In this document: piece by piece, positions 3,255-26,872 of the stretch
How the letters are laid out: every line of letters starts with the position of its first letter
Numbering within the stretch: position 1 is the stretch's first letter
IMG/VR virus record: IMGVR_UViG_3300033182_000980
Span: 1-64,000 of that record
Direction: 5' to 3' (one strand)
Length of the DNA: 64,000 bases
Translations under genes and position numbers: made by a program
The notes under the pieces: generated by a model
The model's database searches: none
Told to the model about the DNA's origin: nothing
The model's input: the letters and a program-made list of their open reading frames with translations, nothing else

Positions 3255-6200
3255 TCATTTCTTACCAAAGCGAGAATTGATTGAGTCTCTAAGGTTATAG
3301 CGTGGAGATTTAGGTGCAATCCTTTTAGCATCTGACCCACCTCGACCTGTATATCGACCACCTGTGGCAAAGGTTTTACCTCCTGCCATTGGGTGTCGGT
3401 ATTGCCTACTGCCTTTAGAACCAGAAGCAAAGTATCGACCTTTGCCGATGTTATTAGAGGCAAGCCATGTCATGCGTACAAGTGCGTCTGACATATCGTC
3501 ATGCTTACCTTTAGTCTGTGGAGCTTCGACTGTGATGAGGTGTTTACCATGCACCGTTTGCTGTAGCTCTAGGAGTTCTTGGATATAAGGCTCATGCCCT
3601 TCTGTCTCATAATTGGGGCGATTATATAGCTTGATTTTTTGATCCCACATCATGTCCTTAAAGTTTTGGTACATCTGTGAGGATAGCTGTTTAGTCATAT
3701 TGTGAGAGGTAAGATTTTTTAGACCTCGCTTCTCAAGTGCTTGTTGAAAGGGTATGCCAGCCCATTGGTCAAACATACCCTCTGTGATGTAGAACTTCTT
3801 TGTGTATTCTAGTACCCAATCAGCGACATCATCGAACTCTAATCGCTCTTTGTCTTGGTAGATCCCTTCACCAGCTTTGATTTGAGCCACGAGGTCTACC
3901 ACGATTTCTTCACCTTCGAGGTGTCCAATAGCGATAGCTGTACCGTCACCTACAAGACCCAAGTCGATTCCCATAAAGTGTGGCTTACGAGCAGGTGCTG
4001 ATCTCTGAGGTTTTAATTGAGGGTCTACACAAGATAAGAGGTCTTGTTCATCTGTGATCCACCCTCTTGTTCTGTCTGTAAACTCGCCACCATACTCTGT
4101 AAAGAACACAGCGGCGTTCTTGAGATAATGCTTCTCGAACTCTTGAGCAGGGACAGTTGGGTTTACTTCCCAAGTAGGTGCTTGAACAGCGAGAATGTTA
4201 TCGGCAGCCGCTCCACCACCCATACCGATTTGGAACAGGTTATAGAACAAGCCCTGTTTACCCAAAGGAGAAGAAATCAAGATAACCCGACCCTCCACCT
4301 CCCCAATAGGAACTGTAGGGTTGTTAGGATCTTTAGCTGAATACGCAGAGGTCGAAGGAACAACAGCGTTATACACTTCTTCTGCACCCGATTGACCCGA
4401 CTCTGTAAAGTGAGCAACCTCGTCAAGAATAACGCATATATTACCAGCACCACGAAGGCCCTTAGCTACACAAGACCTAAATGTAACCTTGAGTGTAGCT
4501 TTAGCAGAGGGATCTTCAATGTATCGACCGTACTTCTCAACATCAGCGGGTGTTTGGAAGCGAGCATAGGATAGGGTGTTATTCGCTGTATATGGTCCAA
4601 AGAAGGCACAGTTGCTTGTAGCGATGTTCCCCTCTAACACAAAGGAATGTGATCCAGGTACTGTGGCACAATATACTTTCTCAAAGCGAGAGGTGGGTTG
4701 AACATCAATAACCGTCCAAGAGCTTGTGTCTCGCTTAACTTGAGCGTGTTTGAGGAAAGACTCTTTGTGCTTAGGGATGATGAAGAATGACTCATCGAGC
4801 GTATGCTTCATCAAGCACATCTTATACATGGTGTGCGGCTTACCTGTTAGGTTTGAGACTCTATGATCCTCTCGGATGCTATAACAACCAATCCCTAAGA
4901 GATAACAGACATCACGAAATGCCTTAATGTTTTCAACAAAGGCACTTGTCATCACAACCTGTCCATTAGAAACAGATCCATCCGCCGCAAAGTATCCAGC
5001 AAGCCACCCTAAGAGGTATGACTTACATTCACTTAGATCGGGTATCTCTTTAAAGTGGTTTGGAGTTCCTGTGAATGATACACCCCCTTTGATTTCTTTA
5101 CGCTTACACATAGAGAAATAAGGCATGAGGGAGGAGTCTTTATCTCCAAAGAGGCAAACACCATTTACAGATCGTGGGTTTTTAGAGTTAGTTCCGTCAC
5201 CAAAAGTGAAGCCATGAGCAACCCCAAAAGGGGAAGGAGTGATGAGGTTCTTGTAGCTTTGACCATAGGTGGCTTGTAGATGATGTTTATTTGGTCTTAG
5301 TTCGTGAGTTTCAAACTCTTGGTAGCCTTTCCCTCTGTATCGCTTTCTGGCATCTCTAGCGAACCATTTATGATCTTTAGTGGCGTATATGGTTTTGAGG
5401 ACACCTTGTCTTTTAAGGGTGATCTTATAGAGCTGTTGTTCGCCAAAACATCGGACAGGTGCTTTGACCCAAGCACCCTCTCTCGTAAGCAAAGTAGGCT
5501 CTTGACCCTCTAGTTCTCCAAGTGTTTTGACACCTAGTGATGTAATGACCTCTGTCTCTGGAGCGAAGCAGTTGCGATAGTGTCCAGACACCTCTTGATA
5601 AAGCAGACCAGCTTGGTCTTTATCAGTCGCCACAGAGATGATTTGGATGTTATTGCTTTGAGGTAGTCCGTAGAACTTTTGTGGGTTTTCTTTTTTGATG
5701 AGCTTATAGGTTTCATAAGCGGCGATACACGCAGAAATCGTAGTGTTATGATTAGTGAACCCATTGCCGATGAACATTGCACCATTAGGCACATTGAGAT
5801 CAAAGACATGAGCTTCACGCTGTTCTACTTTAATGATAGGGTCAAAAAAGTAATCCAGATCAATGAGGTTATATAGTTGAGACTTTGTGGTTTGACTTAG
5901 ACCCTCATGGTCAGCGATCTTCTTGATCTTCCAATAGGGTGTATATTTAGTTGTAGGGCTTAGGTCATGTTTGAGATCGGGGTGGAACTTCTTGAGTCGT
6001 TCAGCATATTCATAGAAGAAGGGAACACCCTCATTAGACCCTCTATAAGAAACGCTCGACATTACACCCTCAAGGCATTTTTTCTTACGCTCTGATATGA
6101 ACCCTATATGTTGGTCAAAAAGTCGCTTAGACTTTGATCCTTTGAGTCTTACACGATACTCGGTTCGATCTTCCCGATTACTTTTGGAAAGGTTAGATGT

Positions 6201-7340
6201 GATGCCGAGATTAAGTAGGAGGAGTTGTGTCTCTCTTGCAAGCTCATAAGAGGCAGTTGAGAGCGTAATGGACTGTGCGTAAGCCGAACCATCAGTTTCA
6301 AACAAACCTCTTAGAAAAGCACAGACTACGCTTTTAGGGGATTGCATGATTGTATGTGGGATTTGCTTGGTAGTTGTCGTGCAATCAACAACCCAACCTA
6401 GATTATTAAGGAACTGTCTTATGTCCTTCCCATGAGCCGAGACTCTGCCAACATCTACTTTCCTCTTATCTGGATAATAAGAGACTTTACCAAACAAGTC
6501 TCTGAACAGACCCATTAAGTATTTCTCAAATGGCTTCTCTCCCACAGTGATCGTGATCGCCTTGTCATTAGTCCAATGTCCGTCCCCTGCGAGTAGACCT
6601 AGTAGTTCACCCCAACGCTCATCAAGGTATTTAGGTTGACCCTCGCTTGTATGGTGCTGGCTTATATCAACATATTCATTGGGCCAGAGTTGACTTGAAC
6701 GATTGATGCAAGCCACATCACCTTCTTCGATCTCTTCAAGGTACTTCCATTCGATCTTACATTCTGGAGTCATCACTTTGATACGATGATTTCCTGTACC
6801 CTCAATCCTGTACCCACAGAATGTCTCTAGGTACTTGGTGGGCTTGACCCCTCCATTATAAAAGTAAGCTGATCTTGAGTTTGCACCCGACTCTTGTGCG
6901 ACATTAACTTGTAAGGGTTGTATCTCTTCACCATTAGGGTCGCCTAAAGAGTCAATACGAACCATGCCCTTATTAGTAGGGATAAGGGTTTCACCTGTGA
7001 CACATTTACCAGACCTACGACCAATGGAGAGGATCATCTCTCGTCTTTGCTTGCCTGGTATAACTTCACCTATATTGCAACGACCTTCTTCATAGATTTT
7101 TCGCAGGTAAGATTTCTCGGTGTGAGTCTCTATTTTGGTTCTTGTCCAGTCCGAGATTTGAAAGGTCTTTTCGTCATCAAGCTCAAGACCATAGTGTGCT
7201 TTGAGGATAACTCTTTGCACAGGGAATAGGGTCATCTTCAAACCCCAAGATGCTTCTACGAACTCAATGATGTCTGCATCTTTCTCTGACTTTTTACCAG
7301 CTCTCGCACTCGCAGAGATCGCTACCGAGGATAAACTCAT
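3255..7340 (-). CDS. terL: Terminase large subunit with two inteins (mature ~621 aa)
   Basis: Walker A GRRSGK|TT, Walker B VILDEVAHF, ILISSP motif, RNase H-like nuclease FMGIDLG...HDDMSDA. Confidence 0.92.
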   Translation of the reverse strand: MSLSSVAISASARAGKKSEKDADIIEFVEASWGLKMTLFPVQRVILKAHYGLELDDEKTFQISDWTRTKIETHTEKSYLRKIYEEGRCNIGEVIPGKQRREMILSIGRRSGKCVTGETLIPTNKGMVRIDSLGDPNGEEIQPLQVNVAQESGANSRSAYFYNGGVKPTKYLETFCGYRIEGTGNHRIKVMTPECKIEWKYLEEIEEGDVACINRSSQLWPNEYVDISQHHTSEGQPKYLDERWGELLGLLAGDGHWTNDKAITITVGEKPFEKYLMGLFRDLFGKVSYYPDKRKVDVGRVSAHGKDIRQFLNNLGWVVDCTTTTKQIPHTIMQSPKSVVCAFLRGLFETDGSAYAQSITLSTASYELARETQLLLLNLGITSNLSKSNREDRTEYRVRLKGSKSKRLFDQHIGFISERKKKCLEGVMSSVSYRGSNEGVPFFYEYAERLKKFHPDLKHDLSPTTKYTPYWKIKKIADHEGLSQTTKSQLYNLIDLDYFFDPIIKVEQREAHVFDLNVPNGAMFIGNGFTNHNTTISACIAAYETYKLIKKENPQKFYGLPQSNNIQIISVATDKDQAGLLYQEVSGHYRNCFAPETEVITSLGVKTLGELEGQEPTLLTREGAWVKAPVRCFGEQQLYKITLKRQGVLKTIYATKDHKWFARDARKRYRGKGYQEFETHELRPNKHHLQATYGQSYKNLITPSPFGVAHGFTFGDGTNSKNPRSVNGVCLFGDKDSSLMPYFSMCKRKEIKGGVSFTGTPNHFKEIPDLSECKSYLLGWLAGYFAADGSVSNGQVVMTSAFVENIKAFRDVCYLLGIGCYSIREDHRVSNLTGKPHTMYKMCLMKHTLDESFFIIPKHKESFLKHAQVKRDTSSWTVIDVQPTSRFEKVYCATVPGSHSFVLEGNIATSNCAFFGPYTANNTLSYARFQTPADVEKYGRYIEDPSAKATLKVTFRSCVAKGLRGAGNICVILDEVAHFTESGQSGAEEVYNAVVPSTSAYSAKDPNNPTVPIGEVEGRVILISSPLGKQGLFYNLFQIGMGGGAAADNILAVQAPTWEVNPTVPAQEFEKHYLKNAAVFFTEYGGEFTDRTRGWITDEQDLLSCVDPQLKPQRSAPARKPHFMGIDLGLVGDGTAIAIGHLEGEEIVVDLVAQIKAGEGIYQDKERLEFDDVADWVLEYTKKFYITEGMFDQWAGIPFQQALEKRGLKNLTSHNMTKQLSSQMYQNFKDMMWDQKIKLYNRPNYETEGHEPYIQELLELQQTVHGKHLITVEAPQTKGKHDDMSDALVRMTWLASNNIGKGRYFASGSKGSRQYRHPMAGGKTFATGGRYTGRGGSDAKRIAPKSPRYNLRDSINSRFGKK
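4611..5570 (-). mobile_element. Intein 2 (320 aa, LAGLIDADG) in terminase
   Basis: Starts CFAPETEVIT, block B ATKDHKW, ends GNIATSN|C; HGFTFGDG and LAGYFAADG blocks. Confidence 0.9.
5745..7004 (-). mobile_element. Intein 1 (420 aa, LAGLIDADG) in the terminase Walker A
   Basis: Starts CVTGETLI, ends GFTNHN|T; LLGLLAGDG and FLRGLFETDG blocks. Confidence 0.92.
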
Positions 7341-13592: not shown

Positions 13593-13652
13593 ATTCTTTA
13601 GATACCTTTCGCTTATAGAGTGAGGAGAATATACCCTCAGAATGGAGTCCAC

Positions 13653-14942
13653 ATGACAAAGGCAGTTTTGTTAGATACGAGTGTTCTAATACACGACCCT
13701 ACCTCTATGACCTCTTTTGGAGATGATACCGAAGTCCTCATTCCAATCTATGTTATTATGGAGCTTGATGTCCTCAAAGACACACCAAAGCGTGAGAAAT
13801 CCCATGTCGCTCACCTTGCCCGACAAGCCTCAAACCTCATCCTTGAGCTACAGCCACAAGGTAAGGTCAAAGTAGTCTCTCACGATGGTGAGATCAGCAT
13901 CCGATCTTTAGATCGTGCTAATCAGATTAGGTATGTAGACCTACTCATTCTACAAACTGCTATCCACCTTAAAGATGATTATGATTTAACTCTAGTATCA
14001 AGAGACATCAACCTTCGTATCATCTGTGAGTCCGTAGGGGTTAAATCAGACGACTACACATCAGACACAAGCACAGATACTCTTAATGGCATCGGACTCA
14101 AAGAGTTCGTACCCGATGTTGTCTTAATGAACCAGCTCGTTAAATCATATTGGCAAGGGGCTGTTAGACTCCCACACGAGTTTGATACCCCTTTCCATGA
14201 AAACCAATACGGATGGTTTATAGCACCAGGTGAAAAGACACATCTATTCGTACACAGAGATAACTCACTTTTCCCTGTAGATAAGGTGCGTACCGAGAAA
14301 GCTAAACCTAGAAATCTTGAGCAACGAGCCGCACTTGACGCTCTATTAGATCAAGACATTGAGCTAGTCTGTCTCTTAGGTAAAGCAGGCACAGGTAAGA
14401 CCTTTCTTGCATTAGCTGCCGCTCTGGAGCAGGCTCACACATATCAGCGTATATTGCTCTCGAAGCCTGTCGTTGATGTGGGTAATGGTATCGGCTTCTT
14501 GCCTGGTTCTTTATCCGAGAAACTTGAGCCTTGGATGCAGAGCTTCTTTGATAACCTCGATCAGATCAACCCTCTTTGGGACGCTGGTCCAATGGGTGGG
14601 GAGATGGGTAGCAAAGAGGGCTTCCTTGAGAAGAACCAGATTGAGATCCAACCTATCCACTCTATTAGAGGTCGCTCACTTAAGAGTGCGTTTATGATTA
14701 TTGATGAGGCACAGAACCTCACCAAGCATGAGATCAAATCAATCATCACAAGAGCGGCAGAGGGGACGAAGGTTGTCCTCTTAGGCGATCCTTATCAGAT
14801 AGACCACCCTTACCTCACCAAGCAATCTAATGGTCTTGTGTATGTGATTGAGCGTATGCTGGATCAGCCTTTATTTGCGTGTGTGAGTCTACATAAGTCA
14901 GAAAGGTCAAGTCTCTCTGATATAGCGGCTGACTTGCTTTAA
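13653..14942 (+). CDS. phoH: PIN-domain PhoH-like ATPase
   Basis: PIN LLDTSVL; GKAGTGKT, GFLPG, RGRSL, IIDEAQN, GDPYQID. Confidence 0.92.
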   Translation: MTKAVLLDTSVLIHDPTSMTSFGDDTEVLIPIYVIMELDVLKDTPKREKSHVAHLARQASNLILELQPQGKVKVVSHDGEISIRSLDRANQIRYVDLLILQTAIHLKDDYDLTLVSRDINLRIICESVGVKSDDYTSDTSTDTLNGIGLKEFVPDVVLMNQLVKSYWQGAVRLPHEFDTPFHENQYGWFIAPGEKTHLFVHRDNSLFPVDKVRTEKAKPRNLEQRAALDALLDQDIELVCLLGKAGTGKTFLALAAALEQAHTYQRILLSKPVVDVGNGIGFLPGSLSEKLEPWMQSFFDNLDQINPLWDAGPMGGEMGSKEGFLEKNQIEIQPIHSIRGRSLKSAFMIIDEAQNLTKHEIKSIITRAAEGTKVVLLGDPYQIDHPYLTKQSNGLVYVIERMLDQPLFACVSLHKSERSSLSDIAADLL

Positions 14943-15197: not shown

Positions 15198-16274
15198 TTA
15201 ATCTTTAATGATCTCGATGTTAGTGACCTGGATGTTCTTAGCGTCAAAGATCACAACCTCTGGCTCACCATTTACAAGGTGTTCCCCACCATACCAAACG
15301 ATAGCGTCATAACCCTCTCGTCTTGCTGACTTAGCCTCTTTCAAGTCACGAACCAACTTGACATTGTTTGCTCTGACCTTGCAAGTAAGGACTTTAGGGA
15401 GGATGGAGTCTGGACTTATGCCTAAGTTTTCCAATGAGTACGCTACGGCATCTCTCCCACTAGAAGAGCTACCACTAAACATTGAAAAGAGATCACCTAG
15501 CGTATCTGCTTGAGCTTGGCTCATTCCATGTGAACCCTCTATAGCGTCAACCACATCAACTAGATCGTTCATGTCTATCCCGATTGTGTCAAGATACTGA
15601 CCACGAGTCATTCCAGAGGGGGCTTTCTCCATCATCATTTCCGTGAGCTTATCATCCCACCCATGATGATAAAGATGGTCTGCATATTGATAGACCTCAG
15701 AGGGTAAACCTTTCTTTAAGAGGGGGAACACCTCGTCATAAGTGATAACAGAGTTCCTACCACTATCGGCATACTTGTAGGCTGTCTTTTTTGACACAGC
15801 GAAGAAGAACCCAGCCCCTATGTATTGAGGTTGGTTCAACAGTTCCTCCCTCATGTACTTAGCGTCAAAGGTCTTAAAATCACTTGTAGTTCCATGATAG
15901 ACAGTAATGGGTTTCCCACTATGTAAAAACTCTGTAAGTTCCTTATTGTAGAAGCTAACAGGTTCTGGGTGGTCTTGTCTTTCATAGTTGAAGCGTACCA
16001 TACCCTTACCAGCCTTCTTGATAAGGTAGCGTAAGACTACCTCATCAGACTTGGTGGCTTCCGAGGATAAGATATGTATCTTGCCATTGACCCACTTGGC
16101 GAAGTCTCCAAGCATAAGCCCCATTTTCTCTAAGACCCGACCATCAGTAAAGAGTGCCTTACCCTCTGCGGGTCTTTCCATGACAAAAGCGTCTATGACT
16201 TTTTTATCTTTAGTCGAAAGCCTGTAAGACGCTTTCATGTATCTATTGGCAACTCTTTGATATGGTTTCATCAT
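15198..16274 (-). CDS. ADP-ribosyltransferase-like protein
   Basis: VYHGT...GAGFFFA...AYKYA...GYDAIV...EVVIFD fits the ART fold of phage polyvalent proteins. Confidence 0.65.
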   Translation of the reverse strand: MMKPYQRVANRYMKASYRLSTKDKKVIDAFVMERPAEGKALFTDGRVLEKMGLMLGDFAKWVNGKIHILSSEATKSDEVVLRYLIKKAGKGMVRFNYERQDHPEPVSFYNKELTEFLHSGKPITVYHGTTSDFKTFDAKYMREELLNQPQYIGAGFFFAVSKKTAYKYADSGRNSVITYDEVFPLLKKGLPSEVYQYADHLYHHGWDDKLTEMMMEKAPSGMTRGQYLDTIGIDMNDLVDVVDAIEGSHGMSQAQADTLGDLFSMFSGSSSSGRDAVAYSLENLGISPDSILPKVLTCKVRANNVKLVRDLKEAKSARREGYDAIVWYGGEHLVNGEPEVVIFDAKNIQVTNIEIIKD

Positions 16275-19285: not shown

Positions 19286-20305
19286 TTACTCCCAAGAGTC
19301 CGAGATGGTTCTAATCAATGCTTCACACACAAGATAAGGGTCAGCATTAGCGTTGGGTCTACGATCTTCAAAGTAGCCACAACCATTCTTAGCTGTCTCA
19401 ACAGGAATACGAACCGAAGCTGTACGGTCAGACACTCCCGACTTAAACTCATCATAACGACAAGTCTCGTGATGTCCTGTTAATCGGATCTCATATCCAG
19501 AACCATAGCGATCAAGGTGCTCTTGAATCCTATGTGACATCTTCTCAACAGCCTTGTTGATTTCTTCAAGACCACCATCTTGCCTCATTGCTTTGGTGGA
19601 GAAGTTGGTGTGCATACCCGCACCATTCCAATCACCGGTGACTGGCTTAGGATCAAGGGTGGCCGAGATGTCGAAATCTTCACCTACACGATATAGAAGC
19701 CACCGAGCAATCCATAGATAGTCGCTTGCAGACAGAGCATCTTGCATAGGACCGCCAAGTTGAAACTCCCATTGACCAGGCATTACCTCTGCGTTGATGC
19801 CTGTGATTGGTAGCTCTGCTTTCAAACAAACATCAAGATGCTTCTCGACTAGATTTCTACCCGACACTTCATCAGCCCCAACGCCACAATAATAAGGTCC
19901 TTGTTCAGCAGGAAACCTACGCTCACTAGGGAAGCCAAGAGGTCTTGATCCCTTATAGAGCGTATACTCTTGCTCAAAGGCAACCCACTCACCTTGATCG
20001 TCAAATGACTTGAGTGCTTCTACGAGCTTGGCTCTTGTATTTGAGGGGTGTTTTTCTCCATCAACAGTCTCGACTTCACATAGAACGAGAATGTTATCTC
20101 CACCTCTAATGGGGTCATCAACAACTCTTACAGGTCGTAGCACACAGTCAGAGGAGCTACCTTCTGCTTGCATGGTAGAAGATCCGTCAAAGCTCCAAAG
20201 GGGTAGTTGTTCTGGTGAAAAAGCAGGAGCTGAAAGGTACTTGGTCTTAGACCTTACTCTTGCTGTTGGGTTTCCACCATCAATCCAAATATATTCTGCG
20301 AGCAT
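19286..20305 (-). CDS. glnII: Glutamine synthetase type II
   Basis: AEYIWIDG, WSFDGSST, QGPYYC, NAEVMPGQWEFQ, DWNGAGMHTNFST, GYFEDRRP; 339 aa. Confidence 0.95.
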   Translation of the reverse strand: MLAEYIWIDGGNPTARVRSKTKYLSAPAFSPEQLPLWSFDGSSTMQAEGSSSDCVLRPVRVVDDPIRGGDNILVLCEVETVDGEKHPSNTRAKLVEALKSFDDQGEWVAFEQEYTLYKGSRPLGFPSERRFPAEQGPYYCGVGADEVSGRNLVEKHLDVCLKAELPITGINAEVMPGQWEFQLGGPMQDALSASDYLWIARWLLYRVGEDFDISATLDPKPVTGDWNGAGMHTNFSTKAMRQDGGLEEINKAVEKMSHRIQEHLDRYGSGYEIRLTGHHETCRYDEFKSGVSDRTASVRIPVETAKNGCGYFEDRRPNANADPYLVCEALIRTISDSWE

Positions 20306-20353
20306 TGAAGCTCTCCTTTCTCAAATAAGAGAGGAAGGATTATAAAGAAACTA

Positions 20354-21058
20354 TCAATCAAACAAGTCGAAGATAGAAATCTGCTCCCCCTTTTGAGGTT
20401 TCGCCTTACCCACTTGAGCTTCTGACTCAATCTCTGTGCCGAGTGGCATCCAATGGCGAATACGAGCCTCGCAAATCTTTGCGTACTCTGGATTAAGCTC
20501 TACCCCCACAAAGTCATGTCTAAGCCGACTCATGGCTATACCTGTAGTTCCCGAACCTAAAAATGGGTCTACAACCTTTGAGTTAGGAGATATATCCCTT
20601 GCACACCATTCCATGATGTCGATTGGTTTAACTGTGGGGTGGATGTTAGCTCGCCCAGCTCCCTCAGCCGACAGACCAGCTTCTCTTTCAGACCGACTCG
20701 CTTTTGATGTGTAGTAAAAGCTATCTGATTTATCTGCTACAAAGATTGCATCTCGAACTTCAAAACCTGTGTCCTCAAGAGCAATAACACCCTTATAACC
20801 AATGTCTTCTGGAATCATTACCACATGAGCACCTGGCTTAAGGATGTCCATGATCTCTTTAGCCTGTTCATCTGTCGGTTCACCTAGTAAGATTAAGCCA
20901 TGCACCATCGGTTCATAAGAAGGGATTAACGCACCCTCCTCATATACCTCTTTCTTGTATGCAGAGAAATCAAGATCATCGAGGGTTGAAACTACGACAC
21001 AAGCGTCATCCACAGGTGGGGTAATCATCGTCTTAAAGTATTCAATCATTTCATCCAT
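20354..21058 (-). CDS. DNA N4/N6-methyltransferase, SAM-binding (C-terminal) subunit
   Basis: FYYTSKASRSERE, HPTVKP, VVDPFLGSGTTG, GVEL; no DPPY motif. Confidence 0.85.
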   Translation of the reverse strand: MDEMIEYFKTMITPPVDDACVVVSTLDDLDFSAYKKEVYEEGALIPSYEPMVHGLILLGEPTDEQAKEIMDILKPGAHVVMIPEDIGYKGVIALEDTGFEVRDAIFVADKSDSFYYTSKASRSEREAGLSAEGAGRANIHPTVKPIDIMEWCARDISPNSKVVDPFLGSGTTGIAMSRLRHDFVGVELNPEYAKICEARIRHWMPLGTEIESEAQVGKAKPQKGEQISIFDLFD

Positions 21059-21133
21059 TTAAAAATCCCATAACTTTGGTTTTGGTTTAGGTTCTTCTCA
21101 CATTCAGAGTCATGTGAGTGTTCAAAGTGTAGC

Positions 21134-21187
21134 TTATATAGATTGTACCTCTGCATATCTGCAATCACCTATTTTGATCTCAATCAT
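21134..21187 (-). pseudogene. 17-codon remnant of a second methyltransferase catalytic gene
   Basis: MIEIKIGDCRYAEVQSI*; first 9 aa identical to the 23555 ORF; same ATGA coupling. Confidence 0.65.
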
Positions 21188-21792
21188 TGGTTATTCTCTT
21201 TCTTAAATTGTTTAAAGAACCTAGAAGCACCACCTTCATCGTTATATCCTTCTTTATATCCTTGTCTTTGAGTAGAAGAACTATGGAAAGAGTTTCCTTG
21301 ATATGGGTTAAAAGTATTATGGTTTTGACTCGACCAACCTTTGACTCGACCACTTTGTTGGTCTAACTCTTTAACAGGACAATCTTCTACACAAGCCCAA
21401 TCTGCCACTGTCTCTTTTCCATCTTCATCTGCATACCCTGCTTTCCCCTTCATATTTACAGGGCTAAAGCTACCTCCTCCCCCATATACATAATTGCTTT
21501 TAGTCTTATTGTCCTGATGAGCAGTACCCGATTTAATCTTCTTTGTACCTTTTAACTCACAACCATCTTTATGAGTGAGGATAAAGTTAGCTGGAAACCT
21601 ACCAATCTCTTGCTCACTTGAGTCTCCATAAATGCCTTTTGTTTTAGAAGCCTCTGACTTGCGACTATGGTTTTTTGTTTTGTCGTGAGAAGAAACTCTA
21701 GTCTCATCTATATTGATAGCTCCGCACCCATGTTTAAGAGTGTTCTCGGCTACAGAACCTTCAAGGGGTTTTCTCAATAGGGTGATAATCAT
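21184..21792 (-). CDS. Methyltransferase variable-region cassette C
   Basis: MIITLLRKPLEGSVAENTLKHGCGAINID...GRFPANF...GGASRFFKQF. Confidence 0.8.
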   Translation of the reverse strand: MIITLLRKPLEGSVAENTLKHGCGAINIDETRVSSHDKTKNHSRKSEASKTKGIYGDSSEQEIGRFPANFILTHKDGCELKGTKKIKSGTAHQDNKTKSNYVYGGGGSFSPVNMKGKAGYADEDGKETVADWACVEDCPVKELDQQSGRVKGWSSQNHNTFNPYQGNSFHSSSTQRQGYKEGYNDEGGASRFFKQFKKENNQ

Positions 21793-23555
21793 TTCTTAAC
21801 CCCAATACATATACTTTCCCATGCTGGTTTAAGAGCAGTACCCCAGCCATCCCAAGTCTTAGCTTCATCCGACACTAAGGCACGAACAGGGATCATAGCG
21901 TTCTTTTGGACAATGCCCACACCCCCTCGTGCAATCCCTCCATGACCTTGTGAGTCCTCAACACTCACACCTGGCTTATGTCCGATGATTTCTCCCTCGA
22001 CCCCTAGTTTCTTTTCAAACTGCTTGGCTAGGTTGTGTGATTTTGGGAATCCGCTATTACCCGTCACAAAAACCTTCCCGTTCCTTCTTGCGACAAAAGC
22101 CCCATAAGGTACTCGCACACACCACATCACACCCTCATAAAACTGAGGTGTTATGGTTGCCAAAGTGGTGCTGGTAGACCATGTGCTTCGTAGAGTTTGT
22201 GATCTCGATTGTTCTTGAACAGCATTAAATTCTCGATCCGATTGTCTGTCGCATCGTGATTGATGTGATGGACACACTCTGTCCGAGTAAGTGGTCTGCT
22301 CAAACGCATAGCAACCTTCAATCTGTGTTCCGCCACATAACCATCTTTCCTCGCCATCTCTTGATACTCCGAGGGGCAACGAACATACTTGATCTTTTGC
22401 TTTGTGTAGTTGCCTTTCCGATTGCGATATGTCACACCACCCTTCCATGCTGGATTGTTTGCCCCCCTCATTGACTCCGAGTATTTCTTTTCTGTCTCCT
22501 CGCTCCAAGCCGACCTCCCCTTGTGTGCATGAGATTTCCACTCTTGACCCCTCACCACCCCGTTGCACTTTTGAGAGCAATAACTGACTTGAACCCTCAA
22601 GGCGTGGCTCGCTGATCTTTTGAAGGTCTTGTTGCAAATAGGGCAAGTCAGAGTTACCTTTTTCTTCTGACACTCTTTCTTGCAATACACCCTTGATCGC
22701 CCCACTTTCCCGTCCGAGACTTGAAACTCCCCCTCGCAACCCCGACACACTTTGGTGATTTTCGGTAGACGCACACACTCGCGACTGCACCGCTCCTGCG
22801 TGGGGCTTTTTGTCTGAAAATCTTGGTCGCAACTCTTGCATACTTTCGTCAGTAGTGGCTTCGCTCTGTGTTTTTGTCTTGGCATACAGATCGACTTTCT
22901 CCTGCCATGAACAGTCGTATCTGTTAGAAAAAGTTTGTTGCAATCCTTGAACTGACATATCTTCCACAAAGGGTATGACTTCTTTTGCTTGCAGGTGTTC
23001 TGCGAGATGAAAAGCTCTTTCTCCCTCTCGTTCAACAATGCAACGGTGGTTTTTAGACACGAGCTGGTCTGTATCATCCGAGTATATTCTGTATGCGGTA
23101 TCCTTGTATTCATATCTCAACATCTCCTGTACTTCTTGGAGATCAAATCGATCTCCCTCTAAGGAGTATGCCACAACCATAGAACCAACATCAAGCTCTT
23201 GATGTTTTGACCACCCTTTATCAGTAAGGATTTCAGTATCCTCACAAAGACACCCATAACTCCAGGCTTCAATCTTGAGATCAGAGAACCCTATTTCCTC
23301 CATCATTGCTATTAAGTGATGAAAGGTTCTTGTACCAGAGAACGCTTTGAGAACCCCATTCGGTTTAAGGACTCTATGAGCTTCAGTTAGCCATCCTCGA
23401 TGCCACTCCCTTTGTTGTGACCCATCTCCGATGTCATCCCAACCTTTAGACATAAACTTGAGTCCATAAGGGGGATCACAGATAATAGCATCAACGGAGT
23501 TATCCTCTAGGTCTTTGAGTCTTTGGGTGCAGTCACCTATCTTGATTTCTATCAT
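21789..23555 (-). CDS. DNA N4/N6-methyltransferase catalytic (N-terminal) subunit with intein
   Basis: IGDC, DPPYG, RVLKPNG, WSYG|SGFPKS, GWGTALKPAWE; 189 aa after splicing. Confidence 0.88.
   Translation of the reverse strand: MIEIKIGDCTQRLKDLEDNSVDAIICDPPYGLKFMSKGWDDIGDGSQQREWHRGWLTEAHRVLKPNGVLKAFSGTRTFHHLIAMMEEIGFSDLKIEAWSYGCLCEDTEILTDKGWSKHQELDVGSMVVAYSLEGDRFDLQEVQEMLRYEYKDTAYRIYSDDTDQLVSKNHRCIVEREGERAFHLAEHLQAKEVIPFVEDMSVQGLQQTFSNRYDCSWQEKVDLYAKTKTQSEATTDESMQELRPRFSDKKPHAGAVQSRVCASTENHQSVSGLRGGVSSLGRESGAIKGVLQERVSEEKGNSDLPYLQQDLQKISEPRLEGSSQLLLSKVQRGGEGSRVEISCTQGEVGLERGDRKEILGVNEGGKQSSMEGWCDISQSERQLHKAKDQVCSLPLGVSRDGEERWLCGGTQIEGCYAFEQTTYSDRVCPSHQSRCDRQSDREFNAVQEQSRSQTLRSTWSTSTTLATITPQFYEGVMWCVRVPYGAFVARRNGKVFVTGNSGFPKSHNLAKQFEKKLGVEGEIIGHKPGVSVEDSQGHGGIARGGVGIVQKNAMIPVRALVSDEAKTWDGWGTALKPAWESICIGVKK
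22056..23252 (-). mobile_element. Intein (399 aa) in the methyltransferase
   Basis: CLCEDTEILT start, block B VSKNHR, ends VMWCVRVP.GAFVARRNGKVFVTGN|S. Confidence 0.88.
22151..23113 (-). CDS. Zn-finger/HNH homing endonuclease nested in the +1 frame of the intein (start uncertain)
   Basis: Repeated CxxC...CxxxC units, NNPAWKGG, YVAEHRL...VHHINHDATDNRIENL. Confidence 0.85.
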   Translation of the reverse strand: MNTRIPHTEYTRMIQTSSCLKTTVALLNEREKELFISQNTCKQKKSYPLWKICQFKDCNKLFLTDTTVHGRRKSICMPRQKHRAKPLLTKVCKSCDQDFQTKSPTQERCSRECVRLPKITKVCRGCEGEFQVSDGKVGRSRVYCKKECQKKKVTLTCPICNKTFKRSASHALRVQVSYCSQKCNGVVRGQEWKSHAHKGRSAWSEETEKKYSESMRGANNPAWKGGVTYRNRKGNYTKQKIKYVRCPSEYQEMARKDGYVAEHRLKVAMRLSRPLTRTECVHHINHDATDNRIENLMLFKNNRDHKLYEAHGLPAPLWQP

Positions 23556-24205
23556 TGGTCATTCCCTGTCTTAAATTGTTTAAAGAACCGAGAAGCACCA
23601 CCTGTATCTCCGAAGCCTGGTTCTCCTTTTTCATGTCCTGTACCCCACCCTGTTCTGCCTTGATTAGAATAGACACCTTGAGCGTTCCCAATACGACCTC
23701 CTGTCGATTTACTTACCCCACTTTGTTGATCTAACTCAACAACAGGGCAACCCTCCACACAAGCCCAATCCATCACCTCCTCTTTCCCATCTTTATCTGC
23801 ATGACCCATCCACGCTTCATTGTCTTTGACAGTTTTCACATCTGTAAGGCTACGATCCTTTTGGTGTTCTTCTTGGTATTTCTTAGACCAAATACCACCT
23901 GGACCATTCGGATAACCTTTATGTCCTTTAACTTTCTTAGTCCCTTTTAATTCACAACCTTCTTTATGGATAAGGATAAAGTTAGCTGGCCATCTCCCTG
24001 TAGTGATCTTGCCCTCGAAGTCCTCTTTAAGACCCGATTGAAAGACTGTACTTTTATGTTTATCGGGAGAACGACCATTTTTAGATGTGTCTTGAATGAT
24101 GTTTCCAATGCGAATTTCATCAATGTTAATCGCACCACAACCATATTTAAGGGTATTGTCAGCAACAGAACCCTCGGTGGGCTTTCTTAATAATGTTATA
24201 ATCAT
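23552..24205 (-). CDS. Methyltransferase variable-region cassette B
   Basis: MIITLLRKPTEGSVADNTLKYGCGAINID...GRWPANF...GGASRFFKQF. Confidence 0.8.
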   Translation of the reverse strand: MIITLLRKPTEGSVADNTLKYGCGAINIDEIRIGNIIQDTSKNGRSPDKHKSTVFQSGLKEDFEGKITTGRWPANFILIHKEGCELKGTKKVKGHKGYPNGPGGIWSKKYQEEHQKDRSLTDVKTVKDNEAWMGHADKDGKEEVMDWACVEGCPVVELDQQSGVSKSTGGRIGNAQGVYSNQGRTGWGTGHEKGEPGFGDTGGASRFFKQFKTGNDQ

Positions 24206-24519
24206 TGGTCATCCTTTGTATCAAATTGTTTGAAGAAATTTGACCCATCACACTTTATATTATTTGTTAAGATGAAGTTAGCTGGCCACCTACCTTTTTC
24301 TTTATACATCTGTATGTCAGATCCAACTTGAGCTACATGACCCGACCAACCTTTTTCTCTAGGGTCTGCTTTCTGTATTTGTCTCGCTTCAAAGTTGATG
24401 CTTTCGTCATCACCAAAAGAAACTCTTAAAGCATCAATATTGATAGCCCCACAACCATGTTTAAGGGTGTTCTCAGCCACACTTCCCTCTAGGGGTTTTC
24501 TCAGTAATGTAATGATCAT
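24202..24519 (-). CDS. Methyltransferase variable-region cassette A (short)
   Basis: MIITLLRKPLEGSVAENTLKHGCGAINID...GRWPANF...FFKQF. Confidence 0.75.
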   Translation of the reverse strand: MIITLLRKPLEGSVAENTLKHGCGAINIDALRVSFGDDESINFEARQIQKADPREKGWSGHVAQVGSDIQMYKEKGRWPANFILTNNIKCDGSNFFKQFDTKDDQ

Positions 24520-25895
24520 CTCTTGCTCCGAATCACATGACCCACAGAACCAATCGTGGTAGCTATGGATATGGATTTGTCTAACAACTCAATCATCCTA
24601 CCGACAGGGAATGGTTCGTATAACTCTTTTATGCCCCAAACGCTTGAGTCATTCTCGGCAGTACCAAGATTATGGCAGACCACTTTGAATGGTGCTTTCA
24701 ACGCTCTGTCCAGATACTCATTGCCTGTCTCGATGTTGTAGAGCGTAGGGATAGCACCTTTGACATAGCCATTCACCTTTGCGTCCATCATAGAAATCAA
24801 CGCTTTCTCGGCAAGTACCCTTCTCCACCTTGCTTCGGCTTCGGTTGCCCCACCTACTCGTAAACGAACTAGAGTGCCATTGAGGGCATTAGCTCTTTTG
24901 CGTAGTAGGTCTTGTGTATGAGGGTGAGGACAAGTCTCTGCTTCTCTAAGAAGTTCATCTACTCGGTCTGCTGTCTTATCTACATGGTCATCATAAGGGT
25001 CTACAATCATCTCACCATAGTTGAGGACTGTGTTAATCGCAGAACCGTAGAACTCTGGTACAAACTTTTCGTATTTCTGATCGACCACAGTTGCCCCTGT
25101 AAACGAAGCAAAGTCATCTAGCCACCCTTTACCCCAAATCACTCTAGGGGCATCACAAGCGTACACTTCAAGCGTTCCCTTATGATTGTTCATTTTGATT
25201 GCTTGTAGGGCTTTACCCCCAACCATTGGAGCGATAATAACTAATGGCCTACCTTCAAACGATCCCATATACTCCATAGCGTTGAGTATATGATCTACTT
25301 CAAATACTGGACGACTAAACAGAGCGAACATTGGACCTTTGAGGTATGCTTCTTTGTCATGGTGTACTTTTAAAGAAGCGTGGAAGGACTCGGTTTCGAC
25401 TACCTCACACCCATTGCCTTCCCATTTTTCAAGAGAGACATGAGAAGATAAAGATCCAGCGAGATAGATTGCTTCGGAGATTTTATCAATGGACTCCTCA
25501 TCAAGCTCACTTTGCAGTCCGATTTCTTTTAGGATGTCTTGGTTAGACTCAAATCGAGGCACAGCATCTACGGCTATATTTACAGCTCGCTTCACCTGCT
25601 CTGTAATAAGAGGGTGTACCTCACCATAATGTCGGTGAAAGGATCTCAAGAGAGATATGGCTATGAACGCACCCCACTTACAACCGTCACCAGATTTACA
25701 GAGTTCTAATAAGGAGGTCTGTATAATTCTAGCGTAGGGTTCTGGTCGGTACGCATTGATGATGGACTTAGCCGAGAGGTTATTCCAAATCTTGTTGTTG
25801 CGAGAGAGTAGGACTGTTCCTCCATTACTCGCATGGCTCAAAACTAAAAGTGATGATAGTTCATTTATTGTAGGTATAAATAAAGATAACGACAT
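24516..25895 (-). CDS. Divergent GroEL-like chaperonin
   Basis: GDG motif, RPLVIIA, AP..G...LDD.A..TGA, L.KR...L.G....RVGGATEAE. Confidence 0.75.
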   Translation of the reverse strand: MSLSLFIPTINELSSLLVLSHASNGGTVLLSRNNKIWNNLSAKSIINAYRPEPYARIIQTSLLELCKSGDGCKWGAFIAISLLRSFHRHYGEVHPLITEQVKRAVNIAVDAVPRFESNQDILKEIGLQSELDEESIDKISEAIYLAGSLSSHVSLEKWEGNGCEVVETESFHASLKVHHDKEAYLKGPMFALFSRPVFEVDHILNAMEYMGSFEGRPLVIIAPMVGGKALQAIKMNNHKGTLEVYACDAPRVIWGKGWLDDFASFTGATVVDQKYEKFVPEFYGSAINTVLNYGEMIVDPYDDHVDKTADRVDELLREAETCPHPHTQDLLRKRANALNGTLVRLRVGGATEAEARWRRVLAEKALISMMDAKVNGYVKGAIPTLYNIETGNEYLDRALKAPFKVVCHNLGTAENDSSVWGIKELYEPFPVGRMIELLDKSISIATTIGSVGHVIRSKR

Positions 25896-25924
25896 GAATG
25901 ATACTCACATAGAAAGGTGAAACG

Positions 25925-26872
25925 ATGTCCTCTATAGTTATACAGACAAGAGCTAACGCTTGCTCATATAATAAAAAGGCAAGTGTCTCTGTTGGGTGGG
26001 GTGGTCAAATCCCCCAATCAGCGATTGAAGCCTATCCTAACCTCGCCAAAGCAGTAGACTCAACAGACTTTGCTCTTGCTGTCGAAGCGTTCCAAGAGGA
26101 TACCTTTGGTGCAGGATCTGGAGTTGATGGAAAGATGGGTCGTGGCACATGGTCAGCGATGTTGAAGAAGTTTGATCGCATTGAGGACGGTCAAGCATAT
26201 TGGACAGTCAATGATCGTAGGGTGGGTGTTGACATTGACCCCAATGTAGAAATCGTCAACTTTGACCAACCAGGTGGTCTTGATCTTCACAGATTTGGCC
26301 ACTTCTCATCTCGTAAAGGTAAGAAGCCGACCATCATTGTTGTGCATTGGGGGGGTCTTGACCCTCACCATTGTCATCGTATCTTCTCAAGTCCTGACCG
26401 ACAAGTCAGCTCTCACGCTGGTATTGGGCTAAGTCCAGAGGGTAATCCTACGATCTATCAGTACCTAGATTTGAACCACAAGTCATGGCATGGTGGTTGG
26501 GCGAACTCGTACTCTGTCGGGATTGACATCTGTCAGCAACCTTCACTCAAGTGGAAGAACCACTATGTGAAGAAGGGTTATGATGTTTACGAGACTACCA
26601 ATGATACAGGTCGTGGAGATAAGAGTATTATCTCCTTAGACCCTAATGTTGCTCTTGCAGTTCGTGAAGCAGTTAAGAGTCTCTGTACAGCACTAGACAT
26701 TCCTTATCAGTTCCCCTGTGGCTCGGACGGTCAATCTTATGACGGAGATTTCTATCATGGGGTTGTCGATAAGAGTTATCTAACAGGTAGCTTCACAGGG
26801 GTTATCGGACACCACCACATCACAGCTAAAAAGTGGGATTGTGCTTGTTGGTGGGATACTCTTTTCGGGTAA
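25925..26872 (+). CDS. Endolysin: PG-binding domain plus N-acetylmuramoyl-L-alanine amidase
   Basis: AV.AFQ...VDGKMG..TW; IVVHW, SSH, WHGG..N..SVGI, IGHH; motif B at 25854-25868. Confidence 0.82.
   Translation: MSSIVIQTRANACSYNKKASVSVGWGGQIPQSAIEAYPNLAKAVDSTDFALAVEAFQEDTFGAGSGVDGKMGRGTWSAMLKKFDRIEDGQAYWTVNDRRVGVDIDPNVEIVNFDQPGGLDLHRFGHFSSRKGKKPTIIVVHWGGLDPHHCHRIFSSPDRQVSSHAGIGLSPEGNPTIYQYLDLNHKSWHGGWANSYSVGIDICQQPSLKWKNHYVKKGYDVYETTNDTGRGDKSIISLDPNVALAVREAVKSLCTALDIPYQFPCGSDGQSYDGDFYHGVVDKSYLTGSFTGVIGHHHITAKKWDCACWWDTLFG

What the first reader, a model, noticed from the sequence alone, without database searches (positions are those of the whole stretch)
22056..23252. Intein whose homing endonuclease is hidden in the +1 reading frame
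Seen: the MTase intein has normal splicing ends (C1, block B His, GN|S), but its in-frame centre looks like non-protein sequence. The +1 frame is open for 320 codons (23113-22151) and encodes repeated CxxC Zn fingers plus an HNH domain, so two frames stay stop-free over ~960 nt. Inference: an HNH gene invaded a mini-intein, is translated separately (possible AGGAG/ATG near 22885, or by frameshift), and its off-frame translation is spliced out. I recall alternative-frame HNHs being described in other phage methylase insertions, so this may be a new example rather than a first.
Basis: partly seen in the sequence, partly recalled or inferred. Interest (0 to 1): 0.78.

Follow-up and report, generated by a model that had tools for sequence, protein, structure and literature searches.

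The report
Intein hiding an out-of-frame HNH nuclease
A self-splicing protein insert (intein) in a giant phage's DNA methylase gene carries its homing nuclease in a second, overlapping reading frame; this layout recurs in over 100 related sequences and annotation pipelines usually miss it.

Summary
The methylase ORF 21789..23555 (-) is interrupted at WSYG|SGFPKS by a 399-codon intein (23252..22056). A 320-codon ORF in the +1 frame (23113..22151) encodes zinc ribbons plus an HNH_3 nuclease.

Both frames stay open by selection. Resampling synonymous HNH codons predicts about 31 stops in the intein frame; none is observed.

Sequencing error is excluded. The same layout, in the same phase, is found in over 100 loci from viral, metagenomic and bacterial contigs, including an Azotobacter vinelandii prophage. 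Independent assemblies show only 3n indels.

Codon-position variability switches from the intein frame to the HNH frame and back. In the intein frame the centre is predicted disordered (pLDDT about 30). In the HNH frame it folds confidently (mean pLDDT 81).

The likely start is ATG 23113, with AGGAG 10 nt upstream, not 22885. About 55 codons over intein block B are constrained in both frames.

Precedents exist from 2025. [quoted passage not shown] I therefore rate this a new variant of a known kind. No HNH-less mini-intein ancestor was found.

The parts
21789..23555 (-). ORF of the methyltransferase N-module precursor (588 aa, motif IV DPPY), including the intein
   Evidence: PF01555, E 1.6e-12. 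The model of the extein part matches CcrM and M.RsrI.
23253..23555 (-). N-extein, residues 1-101, ending ...EAWSYG
22056..23252 (-). Intein, 399 aa, from Cys1 to the terminal Gly-Asn; the next residue is Ser
   Evidence: Removing it gives a 189-aa protein colinear with intein-free orthologues (93% identity to L036).
22923..23252 (-). N-terminal splicing (Hint) domain, intein residues 1-110, with block B ...VSKNHRCIVE
   Evidence: A profile of 19 homologues hits solved inteins 6zgq (E 7e-10) and 7cfv (5e-5). Model pLDDT is 74-90 and the fold matches Hint.
22182..22919 (-). In-frame spacer (precursor residues 213-458): the stop-free -1-frame shadow of the HNH gene
   Evidence: pLDDT about 30 with no secondary structure. 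No family match. The most variable codon position is intein position 1, which is HNH position 3.
22056..22181 (-). C-terminal splicing domain (blocks F and G), ...VMWCVRVPYGAFVARRNGKVFVTGN
   Evidence: invariant G475 C479 ... T498 G499 N500 S501. pLDDT 80-90. Synonymous sites vary freely again.
21792..22055 (-). C-extein, starting SGFPKSHNLAKQ... and ending ...GWGTALKPAWESICIGVKK
22151..23113 (-). HNH endonuclease ORF in the +1 frame (320 codons plus TAA)
   Evidence: 764 homologues. Model mean pLDDT 81. Best solved-structure match is I-HmuI, Z 5.4.
23124..23128 (-). AGGAG Shine-Dalgarno-like motif 10 nt upstream of ATG 23113. A TGA in the HNH frame at 23119..23117 closes that frame just upstream.
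   Evidence: Read directly. AGGAG, GGAGG or GAGGA lies 8-11 nt upstream of the homologous ATG in L002, L003, L004, L062, L063, L064, L067 and L074.
22941..23111 (-). Truly dual-coding stretch: intein residues 48-104 (block B region), which are also HNH residues 1-57 (two predicted helices, motif IPxT...LLNE)
   Evidence: Relative synonymous-codon entropy is 0.86 before the ATG and 0.45 after it (Mann-Whitney p = 1.8e-5, 19 inteins). V73 is GTT in 17/17, E74 GAA 17/17, R75 CGA 16/16 and G77 GGA 18/18. HNH residues 1-35 have pLDDT above 90.
22565..22966 (-). Zinc-ribbon (Cys4) repeats of the HNH protein, residues 50-183
   Evidence: sequence. (C53, C58, C76, C113, C157 and C160 nearly invariant; C179 and C183 invariant). 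Weak matches to YacG and eL24 treble clefs.
22187..22279 (-). HNH catalytic beta-beta-alpha-metal motif, ...ECVHHINHDATDNRIENLMLFKNNRDHKLYE
   Evidence: PF13392 match. H282, H283 and H305 are invariant; N295 is nearly invariant.

Best explanation
The catalytic N-module of a split N6/N4 DNA methyltransferase of a 376-kb phage is interrupted, at the conserved YG|SGFPKS site, by a protein-splicing intein. The intein's homing nuclease is not part of the intein polypeptide.

The nuclease is a 320-aa HNH enzyme related to I-HmuI. It has an N-terminal helical module and several zinc ribbons. It is encoded in the +1 frame of the same DNA. Its ORF starts inside the N-terminal splicing domain (ATG 23113, preceded by AGGAG) and stops where the C-terminal splicing domain begins.

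Ribosomes reading the methylase frame produce a precursor. Its roughly 250-residue centre is a stop-free, disordered 'shadow' of the HNH gene, and splicing removes it together with the intein. Ribosomes that start internally at ATG 23113 make the nuclease.

The nuclease then presumably cuts or nicks intein-free methylase alleles in co-infecting relatives, and repair copies the whole element in (homing).

Shown here: the anatomy, selection on both frames, the switch of the selected frame, dual coding over block B, the conserved start signal, the Hint and HNH folds, the wide and patchy distribution, and the empty alleles.

Inferred, not shown: actual splicing, internal initiation, and the nuclease's target and homing.
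For: - Frames and stop avoidance.
- The same phase in 10 of 10 viral loci, 4 assembly loci including the Azotobacter vinelandii CP092752.2 prophage, 22-23 of 24 genome loci, 77 of 80 metagenome loci and the huge phage LR756508.
- Independent contigs from other studies carry the intein, with only a 6-nt indel inside it. Pairwise indels are 6, and 72, 9 and 3 nt.
- The frame under selection switches at about intein residues 85 and 357.
- Dual constraint over block B.
- Conserved M-x-T-x-IPxT start and SD-like motif.
- Hint identity: profile against PDB, 6zgq E 7e-10; predicted fold, 34 intein/Hint hits.
- Centre disordered in the intein frame but folded in the HNH frame. HNH_3 match and I-HmuI similarity.
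- Precise insertion, with intein-free orthologues at 84-93% identity. Probable intein-less joints appear in the same metagenomes, though they skip 100-230 nt more than the intein and the sequence between is not known.
Against: - There is no expression, splicing or cleavage data.
- The penultimate intein residue is Gly, not the canonical His. Single-sequence Pfam and NCBIfam intein matches are below threshold.
- An SD-plus-ATG four codons before the IPxT motif is present in only about half of the 23 loci inspected. Others have GTG there, or an ATG 18-23 codons further upstream.
- Internal initiation inside a translated ORF is usually inefficient.
- The structural match to I-HmuI is modest (Z 5.4), and Foldseek on the whole HNH model found nothing significant.
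Confidence: 0.78

Rival explanations
1. Assembly or sequencing artefact: two compensating indels hide an ordinary intein whose HNH domain is really in frame.
For: None was found.
Against: Over 100 independent loci at 37-89% HNH identity keep the same two frames. A 13,980-nt contig from another study covers 21695..23270 with only a 4+2 nt deletion inside the intein. All indels between homologues are multiples of 3. The stop-avoidance signature, 0 of 105 at-risk codons ending in T, could not arise from an error.
Confidence: 0.01
2. The HNH is made by a programmed +1 ribosomal frameshift from the methylase/intein frame. The product would be a fusion of N-extein, N-terminal intein half and HNH, not a separately initiated protein.
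For: The phase is always +1. Not every homologue has a good SD plus ATG at the conserved place. One database ORF (P0151, 801 aa) shows the HNH frame fused to the C-terminal splicing domain and C-extein, so frame joins do occur in this family.
Against: In the window the HNH frame is closed by a TGA two codons before ATG 23113. Conservation in the HNH frame begins three codons after that ATG. An AGGAG-like motif sits 8-11 nt upstream in many homologues. Most homologous ORFs begin M-x-T-x-IP. Free-standing and intein-less relatives are ordinary ORFs with their own starts. I did not search for a slippery site or stimulator.
Confidence: 0.06
3. The insert no longer splices. The methylase N-module is then inactive or carries the 399-residue insert permanently, as proposed for the intein-less ShiLan-type insertions, and only the HNH gene matters.
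For: The penultimate residue is Gly rather than His. The methylase is probably dispensable. Relatives with no Hint domain keep the shadow peptide inside the methylase (L009-L011, L080-L090). In L112 the host gene is broken while the HNH ORF is intact.
Against: C1, H69, the block F Cys and the T-G-N|S-G-F-P-K junction are invariant across 20 diverged inteins. Synonymous sites vary freely while the residues are held, which is purifying selection on the splicing domain. The stop-free host frame is maintained in about 97% of loci.
Confidence: 0.07
4. The nuclease has been recruited for another job, for example interference with competing phages or DNA processing, and does not mobilise the intein.
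For: HNH nucleases have several roles in phages (PMC11855218, section 4.2). The family has many zinc-ribbon variants.
Against: The intein-plus-HNH unit is patchily distributed among near-identical methylases. The same unit sits at the same site in methylases that are only about 35-50% identical. This is the classic footprint of homing. Cutting competitors' empty alleles and homing would be the same biochemical act.
Confidence: 0.08

Closest known systems
[quoted passage not shown]
   Same: An intein whose homing nuclease is a separate ORF on the same strand in another frame. The in-frame centre is unstructured. Both frames are open. The elements are patchily distributed and missed by annotation pipelines.
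   Different: Their nuclease is endonuclease VII-like and lies in frame 3; here it is HNH_3 plus zinc ribbons in frame 2 (+1). Their hosts are DNA polymerase, minor capsid, terminase and thymidylate synthase of actinophages; here the host is an N6/N4 methylase of a jumbo phage and of many prophages. They state that the second ORF typically lies outside the splicing domain; here it overlaps block B under double constraint.
ShiLan domain: an out-of-frame HNH inserted in mycobacteriophage DNA methylases (Arsenault, Gosselin and Gogarten, Genes 2025, PMC11855218)
   Same: A hidden HNH with zinc fingers inside a stop-free insertion in a PF01555 phage methylase. It is distantly homologous to the window's HNH: Mantra gp64 and Totinger match at 32% identity, E 7e-10. 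Intein-less relatives of the window's HNH resemble it closely (L009-L011, L080-L090).
   Different: ShiLan has no splicing domain, lies at another site, and is in the third frame, which I verified on Mantra. Its proposed start is a GTG without an RBS. Here the shadow peptide lies inside a bona fide intein and would be spliced out.
Canonical inteins with an in-frame homing endonuclease domain (LAGLIDADG or in-frame HNH)
   Same: A Hint splicing domain split by the nuclease-coding DNA, inserted at a conserved catalytic-site motif of a DNA-metabolism enzyme. The window itself holds a canonical one, in ORF 3255..7340 (-).
   Different: In canonical inteins the nuclease is a domain of the intein polypeptide. 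Here it is a separate translation product of an overlapping frame.
I-HmuI, the HNH homing (nicking) endonuclease of Bacillus phage SPO1 introns (PDB 1u3e)
   Same: It is the best solved-structure match of the catalytic region (Z 5.4, model residues 224-313). Both are phage homing enzymes with added DNA-binding modules.
   Different: I-HmuI is intron-encoded and not overlapped by another frame. Sequence identity is only 14%. It lacks the zinc-ribbon array and the N-terminal module.

Membership tests
Intein (protein-splicing Hint domain) | Precise in-frame insertion in a host protein, with intein-free alleles colinear after its removal | tested here: met
   Removing 399 codons gives a 189-aa protein, the same length as 189-aa orthologues and 93% identical to L036. 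The junction is WSYG|SGFPKS.
Intein (protein-splicing Hint domain) | N-terminal nucleophile (Cys/Ser1), block B His, C-terminal Asn, and Ser/Thr/Cys at +1 | tested here: met
   C102, H170, N500 and S501 are invariant in 20 homologues.
Intein (protein-splicing Hint domain) | Penultimate His in block G (canonical class 1) | tested here: not met
   The penultimate residue is an invariant Gly (T-G-N). Some active inteins lack this His (from my own knowledge, not tested here), so I do not treat this as disqualifying.
Intein (protein-splicing Hint domain) | Hint fold, or sequence homology to known inteins | tested here: met
   The profile of the N-domain hits 6zgq at E 7e-10, 7cfv at 5e-5 and 9hth at 3e-4. 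The predicted structure has 34 PDB hits at E<=1e-3, which are inteins, BIL and hedgehog Hint domains, plus the methylases matched by the extein. Single-sequence Pfam and NCBIfam matches are below threshold.
Intein (protein-splicing Hint domain) | Protein-splicing activity | not testable with these tools
   This needs expression and a western blot or mass spectrometry.
HNH (His-Me finger) endonuclease, Pfam HNH_3, I-HmuI-like | Beta-beta-alpha-metal motif with conserved His...Asn...His | tested here: met
   PF13392 scores 25.5-25.8 bits against a cut-off of 24.8. H282, H283 and H305 are invariant and N295 nearly invariant in 92 sequences. I-HmuI is the top structural match, Z 5.4.
HNH (His-Me finger) endonuclease, Pfam HNH_3, I-HmuI-like | Site-specific DNA cleavage or nicking of the empty allele | not testable with these tools
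   This needs an in vitro assay on the WSYG-SGFPKS-coding DNA.
Inteins with an out-of-frame homing nuclease (Gosselin et al. 2025) | Nuclease ORF on the same strand in another frame inside the intein, with both frames open and the in-frame centre unstructured | tested here: met
Inteins with an out-of-frame homing nuclease (Gosselin et al. 2025) | Endonuclease VII-like nuclease in frame 3, lying outside the splicing domain | tested here: not met
   Here the nuclease is HNH_3 in the +1 frame, and its ORF overlaps block B by about 57 codons.
ShiLan-type out-of-frame HNH insertion in methylases (Arsenault et al. 2025) | No splicing domain, so the insertion stays in the methylase | tested here: not met
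   The window has a Hint domain on both sides of the HNH. Intein-less relatives elsewhere do meet this feature (L009-L011, L080-L090).
ShiLan-type out-of-frame HNH insertion in methylases (Arsenault et al. 2025) | HNH homologous to the ShiLan HNH and in the third frame | tested here: inconclusive
   Homology is distant (32% identity over 148 aa, E 7e-10, to Mantra and Totinger). The phase differs: +2 in Mantra and +1 here.

The most novel reading that the evidence does not exclude
The first roughly 50 residues of the nuclease (two confident helices, motif IPxT...LLNE) may have arisen de novo by overprinting on intein block B and are now selected in their own right. The same 170 nt would then encode a Hint beta-region in one frame and a nuclease module in another.

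The family also shows several states side by side: free-standing, nested in the methylase loop without an intein, nested in an intein, escaped again (L131), and partly fused in frame (P0151). That would make it a natural series for how homing nucleases and inteins become composite elements, and for the intein acting as a disposal device for the shadow peptide.
Probability: 0.45. Interest if true: 0.75.

Novelty: new variant of a known kind. Interest (0 to 1): 0.6.

Why it matters
It shows that inteins with an overprinted homing nuclease are not a rarity of actinophages. This is a large, widespread family: over 100 loci were inspected here, 764 protein clusters match at E<=1e-5, and carriers include jumbo phages and prophages of culturable bacteria.

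Gene callers systematically mis-annotate the locus as 'HNH endonuclease' plus a truncated methylase.

The family offers clean, quantifiable examples of selection keeping two frames open and of true dual coding. It also gives testable material for the 'splicing domain first, nuclease invades later' model of intein evolution.

Practically, 'mini-inteins' and 'decayed' inteins should be screened in all frames.

Tried and rejected
Rejected. That Met is absent from L002, and a start there would omit the conserved N-terminal region and the first zinc module.
- **Search for an HNH-less mini-intein ancestor at this site.** The 23 in-frame relatives of the splicing domain all have inteins of 269-427 aa, and none was found. 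This is not proof of absence. The search is word-based, and only proteins 0.55-1.75 times the length of the 588-aa query (about 320-1030 aa) were candidates.
- **Sigma-70 promoter or terminator scan of 20200..26200.** Counts equal those of shuffled sequence, and there is no site on the minus strand upstream of the HNH start. This is uninformative for a jumbo phage.
- **Foldseek of the whole HNH model against PDB.** No significant hit. Only the VIA re-alignment put I-HmuI on top.
- **HNH profile against PDB sequences.** Only a weak eL24 zinc-ribbon match.
- **Direction of change between intein-borne and intein-less forms.** The trees cluster the states (2-6 changes) but the backbone is unresolved, so no order of events is claimed.
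- **Apparent block B remnant in the closed frame of L131.** Too weak to claim.
- **Phage GenBank collection.** The only close DNA or protein relative is the unannotated huge phage LR756508.
- **RNA evidence.** None was obtained.
Full report
**1. What is in the window**

On the minus strand, ORF 21789..23555 (588 aa) starts as a PF01555 N6/N4 DNA methylase with motif DPPY. After ...EAWSYG it continues CLCEDTEILT..., and 399 codons later it reads ...GKVFVTGN|SGFPKSHNLAKQ.

A 320-codon ORF, 23113..22151, lies in the +1 frame entirely inside the intein. It matches Pfam HNH_3 above the gathering score. It also contains three Cys4 modules plus a degenerate one.

The window comes from a 375,691-bp viral contig, IMGVR_UViG_3300033182_000980. 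Nearby genes are phage-like: PhoH/PIN, an amidase, and a second, canonical LAGLIDADG intein.

**2. The double openness is not chance**

I held the HNH protein fixed and redrew synonymous codons from the window's own codon usage. The intein frame then expects 30.8 +/- 4.2 stops, with a minimum of 18 in 3000 draws. None is observed.

Permuting the ORF's own codons still gives about 21 stops. The mechanism is visible directly. None of the 105 codons that precede an AA-, AG- or GA-starting codon ends in T, against 68 of 214 elsewhere. The third frame carries 15 stops.

**3. It is not an error**

- All ten viral loci with an HNH homologue (45-67% identity) have the HNH inside a much longer open frame in the same relative phase.
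- The same holds for loci found through database proteins. These include a prophage in the Azotobacter vinelandii chromosome CP092752.2, where annotation shows 'HNH endonuclease' overlapping a truncated methylase.
- It also holds for 22-23 of 24 bacterial or archaeal genome contigs, for 77 of the 80 best metagenomic loci, and for the huge phage LR756508.
- Contigs from other studies laid on the window include a 13,980-nt contig. They cover the intein at about 95% identity, and the only indel inside it is a 4+2 nt deletion. Probable intein-less joints occur in two of the same metagenomes; they skip 100-230 nt more than the intein, and the sequence between is not known.
- Pairwise indels against L063 and L002 are 6, and 72, 9 and 3 nt.

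**4. Which frame is selected where**

In a codon alignment of eight homologous inteins the least-constrained position changes along the sequence. It is intein position 3 for residues 1 to about 85, intein position 1 (which is HNH position 3) for about 85 to 355, and intein position 3 again from about 357.

Pairwise substitution counts agree. In the centre they are 33/19/13 (against L063) and 114/73/54 (against L002) at intein positions 1/2/3. The centre is therefore selected as HNH, and the ends as intein.

**5. True dual coding and the start codon**

Synonymous codons of conserved intein residues vary freely in residues 1-46 and 366-399. They are nearly frozen from residue 51 onward: T52 is ACC in 16/17, V73 GTT 17/17, E74 GAA 17/17, R75 CGA 16/16 and G77 GGA 18/18. 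Relative codon entropy is 0.86 before and 0.45 after, Mann-Whitney p = 1.8e-5, in 19 inteins.

These frozen bases spell the conserved HNH N-terminus, IPxT...LLNE. I5, P6, L27, N28 and E31 are nearly invariant in 92 proteins. That region is predicted as two helices with pLDDT above 90.

The freeze begins three codons after ATG 23113. This ATG follows a TGA in the same frame at 23119..23117, and AGGAG lies 10 nt upstream at 23128..23124. Most homologous ORFs begin M-x-T-x-IP. Many loci have AGGAG, GGAGG or GAGGA 8-11 nt upstream, while others use a GTG there or an ATG 18-23 codons further up.

**6. Identity of the two proteins**

*Intein.* Single-sequence profile matches are sub-threshold. A profile of 19 N-terminal domains, however, hits the solved inteins AceL NrdHF (6zgq, E 7e-10), Spl DnaX (7cfv) and a PolB intein (9hth).

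The AlphaFold model of the precursor is confident for the extein and for intein residues 1-110 and 358-399 (pLDDT 74-90). It has pLDDT about 30 and no secondary structure for precursor residues 213-458. Its ordered parts match inteins, BIL and hedgehog Hint domains, and CcrM and M.RsrI for the extein.

C1, the block B His, a block F Cys and TGN|SGFPK are invariant. The penultimate residue is Gly, not His.

*HNH.* The model has mean pLDDT 81. The best solved match is I-HmuI, at a modest Z of 5.4.

**7. Mobility footprint**

Removing the intein gives a 189-aa protein, the same length as intein-free orthologues in many related phages. Identity to them is 84-93%, and the junction is WSYG|SGFPKS.

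The same intein-plus-HNH unit sits at the same site in methylases only about 35-50% identical to the window's, including single-chain methylases. This pattern fits homing. The activity itself is inferred.

**8. The wider family**

- There are 764 protein clusters at E<=1e-5, and 108 representatives of 50%-identity clusters at E<=1e-30.
- A second arrangement carries the same HNH lineage, again in the +1 frame, in the variable loop about 12-20 codons downstream of SGFPKS with no Hint domain (L009-L011, L080, L081, L085-L090, L174, L177). This resembles the published ShiLan domain.
- The ShiLan-type HNH of Mycobacterium phage Mantra is a distant homologue (32% identity, E 7e-10). It lies in the +2 frame at another site.
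- Truly free-standing copies are rare among close relatives. L121 lacks the N-terminal module. L131 has it, with the other frames closed, and it groups inside intein-borne lineages with moderate support. That suggests escape from an intein.
- In L112 the host gene is broken but the HNH ORF is intact.
- P0151 is an 801-aa ORF in which the HNH frame runs into the C-terminal splicing domain and the C-extein.
- The trees cluster the states but do not resolve the order of events.
- No HNH-less mini-intein relative was found.

**9. Comparison with what is known**

Two 2025 papers from one laboratory are the precedents.

- PMC11855218 describes the intein-less, out-of-frame ShiLan HNH in mycobacteriophage methylases.
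[quoted passage not shown] These occur in polymerase, capsid, terminase and thymidylate synthase. The authors note that such ORFs typically lie outside the splicing domain.

Further full-text searches found nothing closer.

The present element combines the two themes. It differs in nuclease family, phase, host gene, host range, family size and the constrained overlap with block B. Hence I rate it a new variant of a known kind.

**10. Verdict**

Splicing, internal initiation and homing remain to be shown experimentally.

Noticed in passing
window 3255..7340 (-): A 1361-aa ORF contains a second, canonical intein. Pfam Intein_splicing (E 3.7e-15) flanks an in-frame LAGLIDADG_3 domain (E 6e-26), at about residues 127-532. 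The host protein was not identified.
   Followed up: no
window 20354..24519 (-): The methylase is split into modules encoded by separate ORFs joined by ATGA stop/start overlaps. Three paralogous 'MIITLLRKP...GCGAINID...RWPANFIL...FFKQF' middle modules lie at 24202..24519, 23552..24205 and 21184..21792. The DPPY N-module carries the intein. A C-terminal FxGSGTT module lies at 20354..21058. Single-chain relatives have all parts in one protein (L003, L007, L008). This may be a combinatorial, multi-specificity methylase.
   Followed up: partly
L062 (Azotobacter vinelandii CP092752.2, 4117898-4126827); also L064 and L066: Public annotation and gene calls list the nested ORF as 'HNH endonuclease', followed by an overlapping truncated methylase. 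The N-extein and N-terminal intein half are left uncalled. The long frame is in fact open throughout.
   Followed up: yes
L131:2501-3286: A free-standing copy of the HNH that still has the N-terminal IPxxEF...LNELE module. Both other frames are full of stops and no methylase is nearby. In the tree it groups with the intein-borne L074 and L101 (support 88/95 and 89/81).
   Followed up: partly
L112:2501-3292: An intein-borne HNH with an intact ORF, while the host methylase/intein frame has stops and a frameshift in the N-extein. This is either a decaying host gene or a contig with a different genetic code.
   Followed up: no
P0151 (801 aa): A database ORF in which the HNH frame continues, without a stop, into the C-terminal splicing domain (...GKAFITGN|SGFPKS) and the whole C-terminal methylase. 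It is a natural or artefactual frame fusion at the 3' end of the HNH gene.
   Followed up: no
window 22056..22181 and alignment A4: The intein has an invariant Cys in block F (VWC) and Gly instead of the penultimate His. Its best sequence and structure match is the class 3 AceL NrdHF intein (6zgq), yet Cys1 is invariant. The splicing class is uncertain.
   Followed up: no
window 22049..23356 and 22052..23485 (contigs of runs X1 and X6): Contigs from the same metagenomes join the methylase flanks while skipping the intein region. These are probably intein-free alleles of related phages coexisting with the carrier. The joints are imprecise because the flanks diverge.
   Followed up: partly
L098 (Mycobacterium phage Mantra gp64): Besides the +2-frame ShiLan HNH, the methylase carries an in-frame LAGLIDGEG segment right after DPPY with no Hint domain. 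This is the 'lone LAGLIDADG' already described in PMC11855218.
   Followed up: no
window 15198..16274 (-), 19286..20305 (-), 13620..14942 (+): Neighbouring ORFs match ART-PolyVal (an ADP-ribosyltransferase of polyvalent proteins), glutamine synthetase N and C domains, and PIN plus PhoH. ORF 24516..25895, directly upstream of the methylase cluster, has no Pfam match.
   Followed up: no
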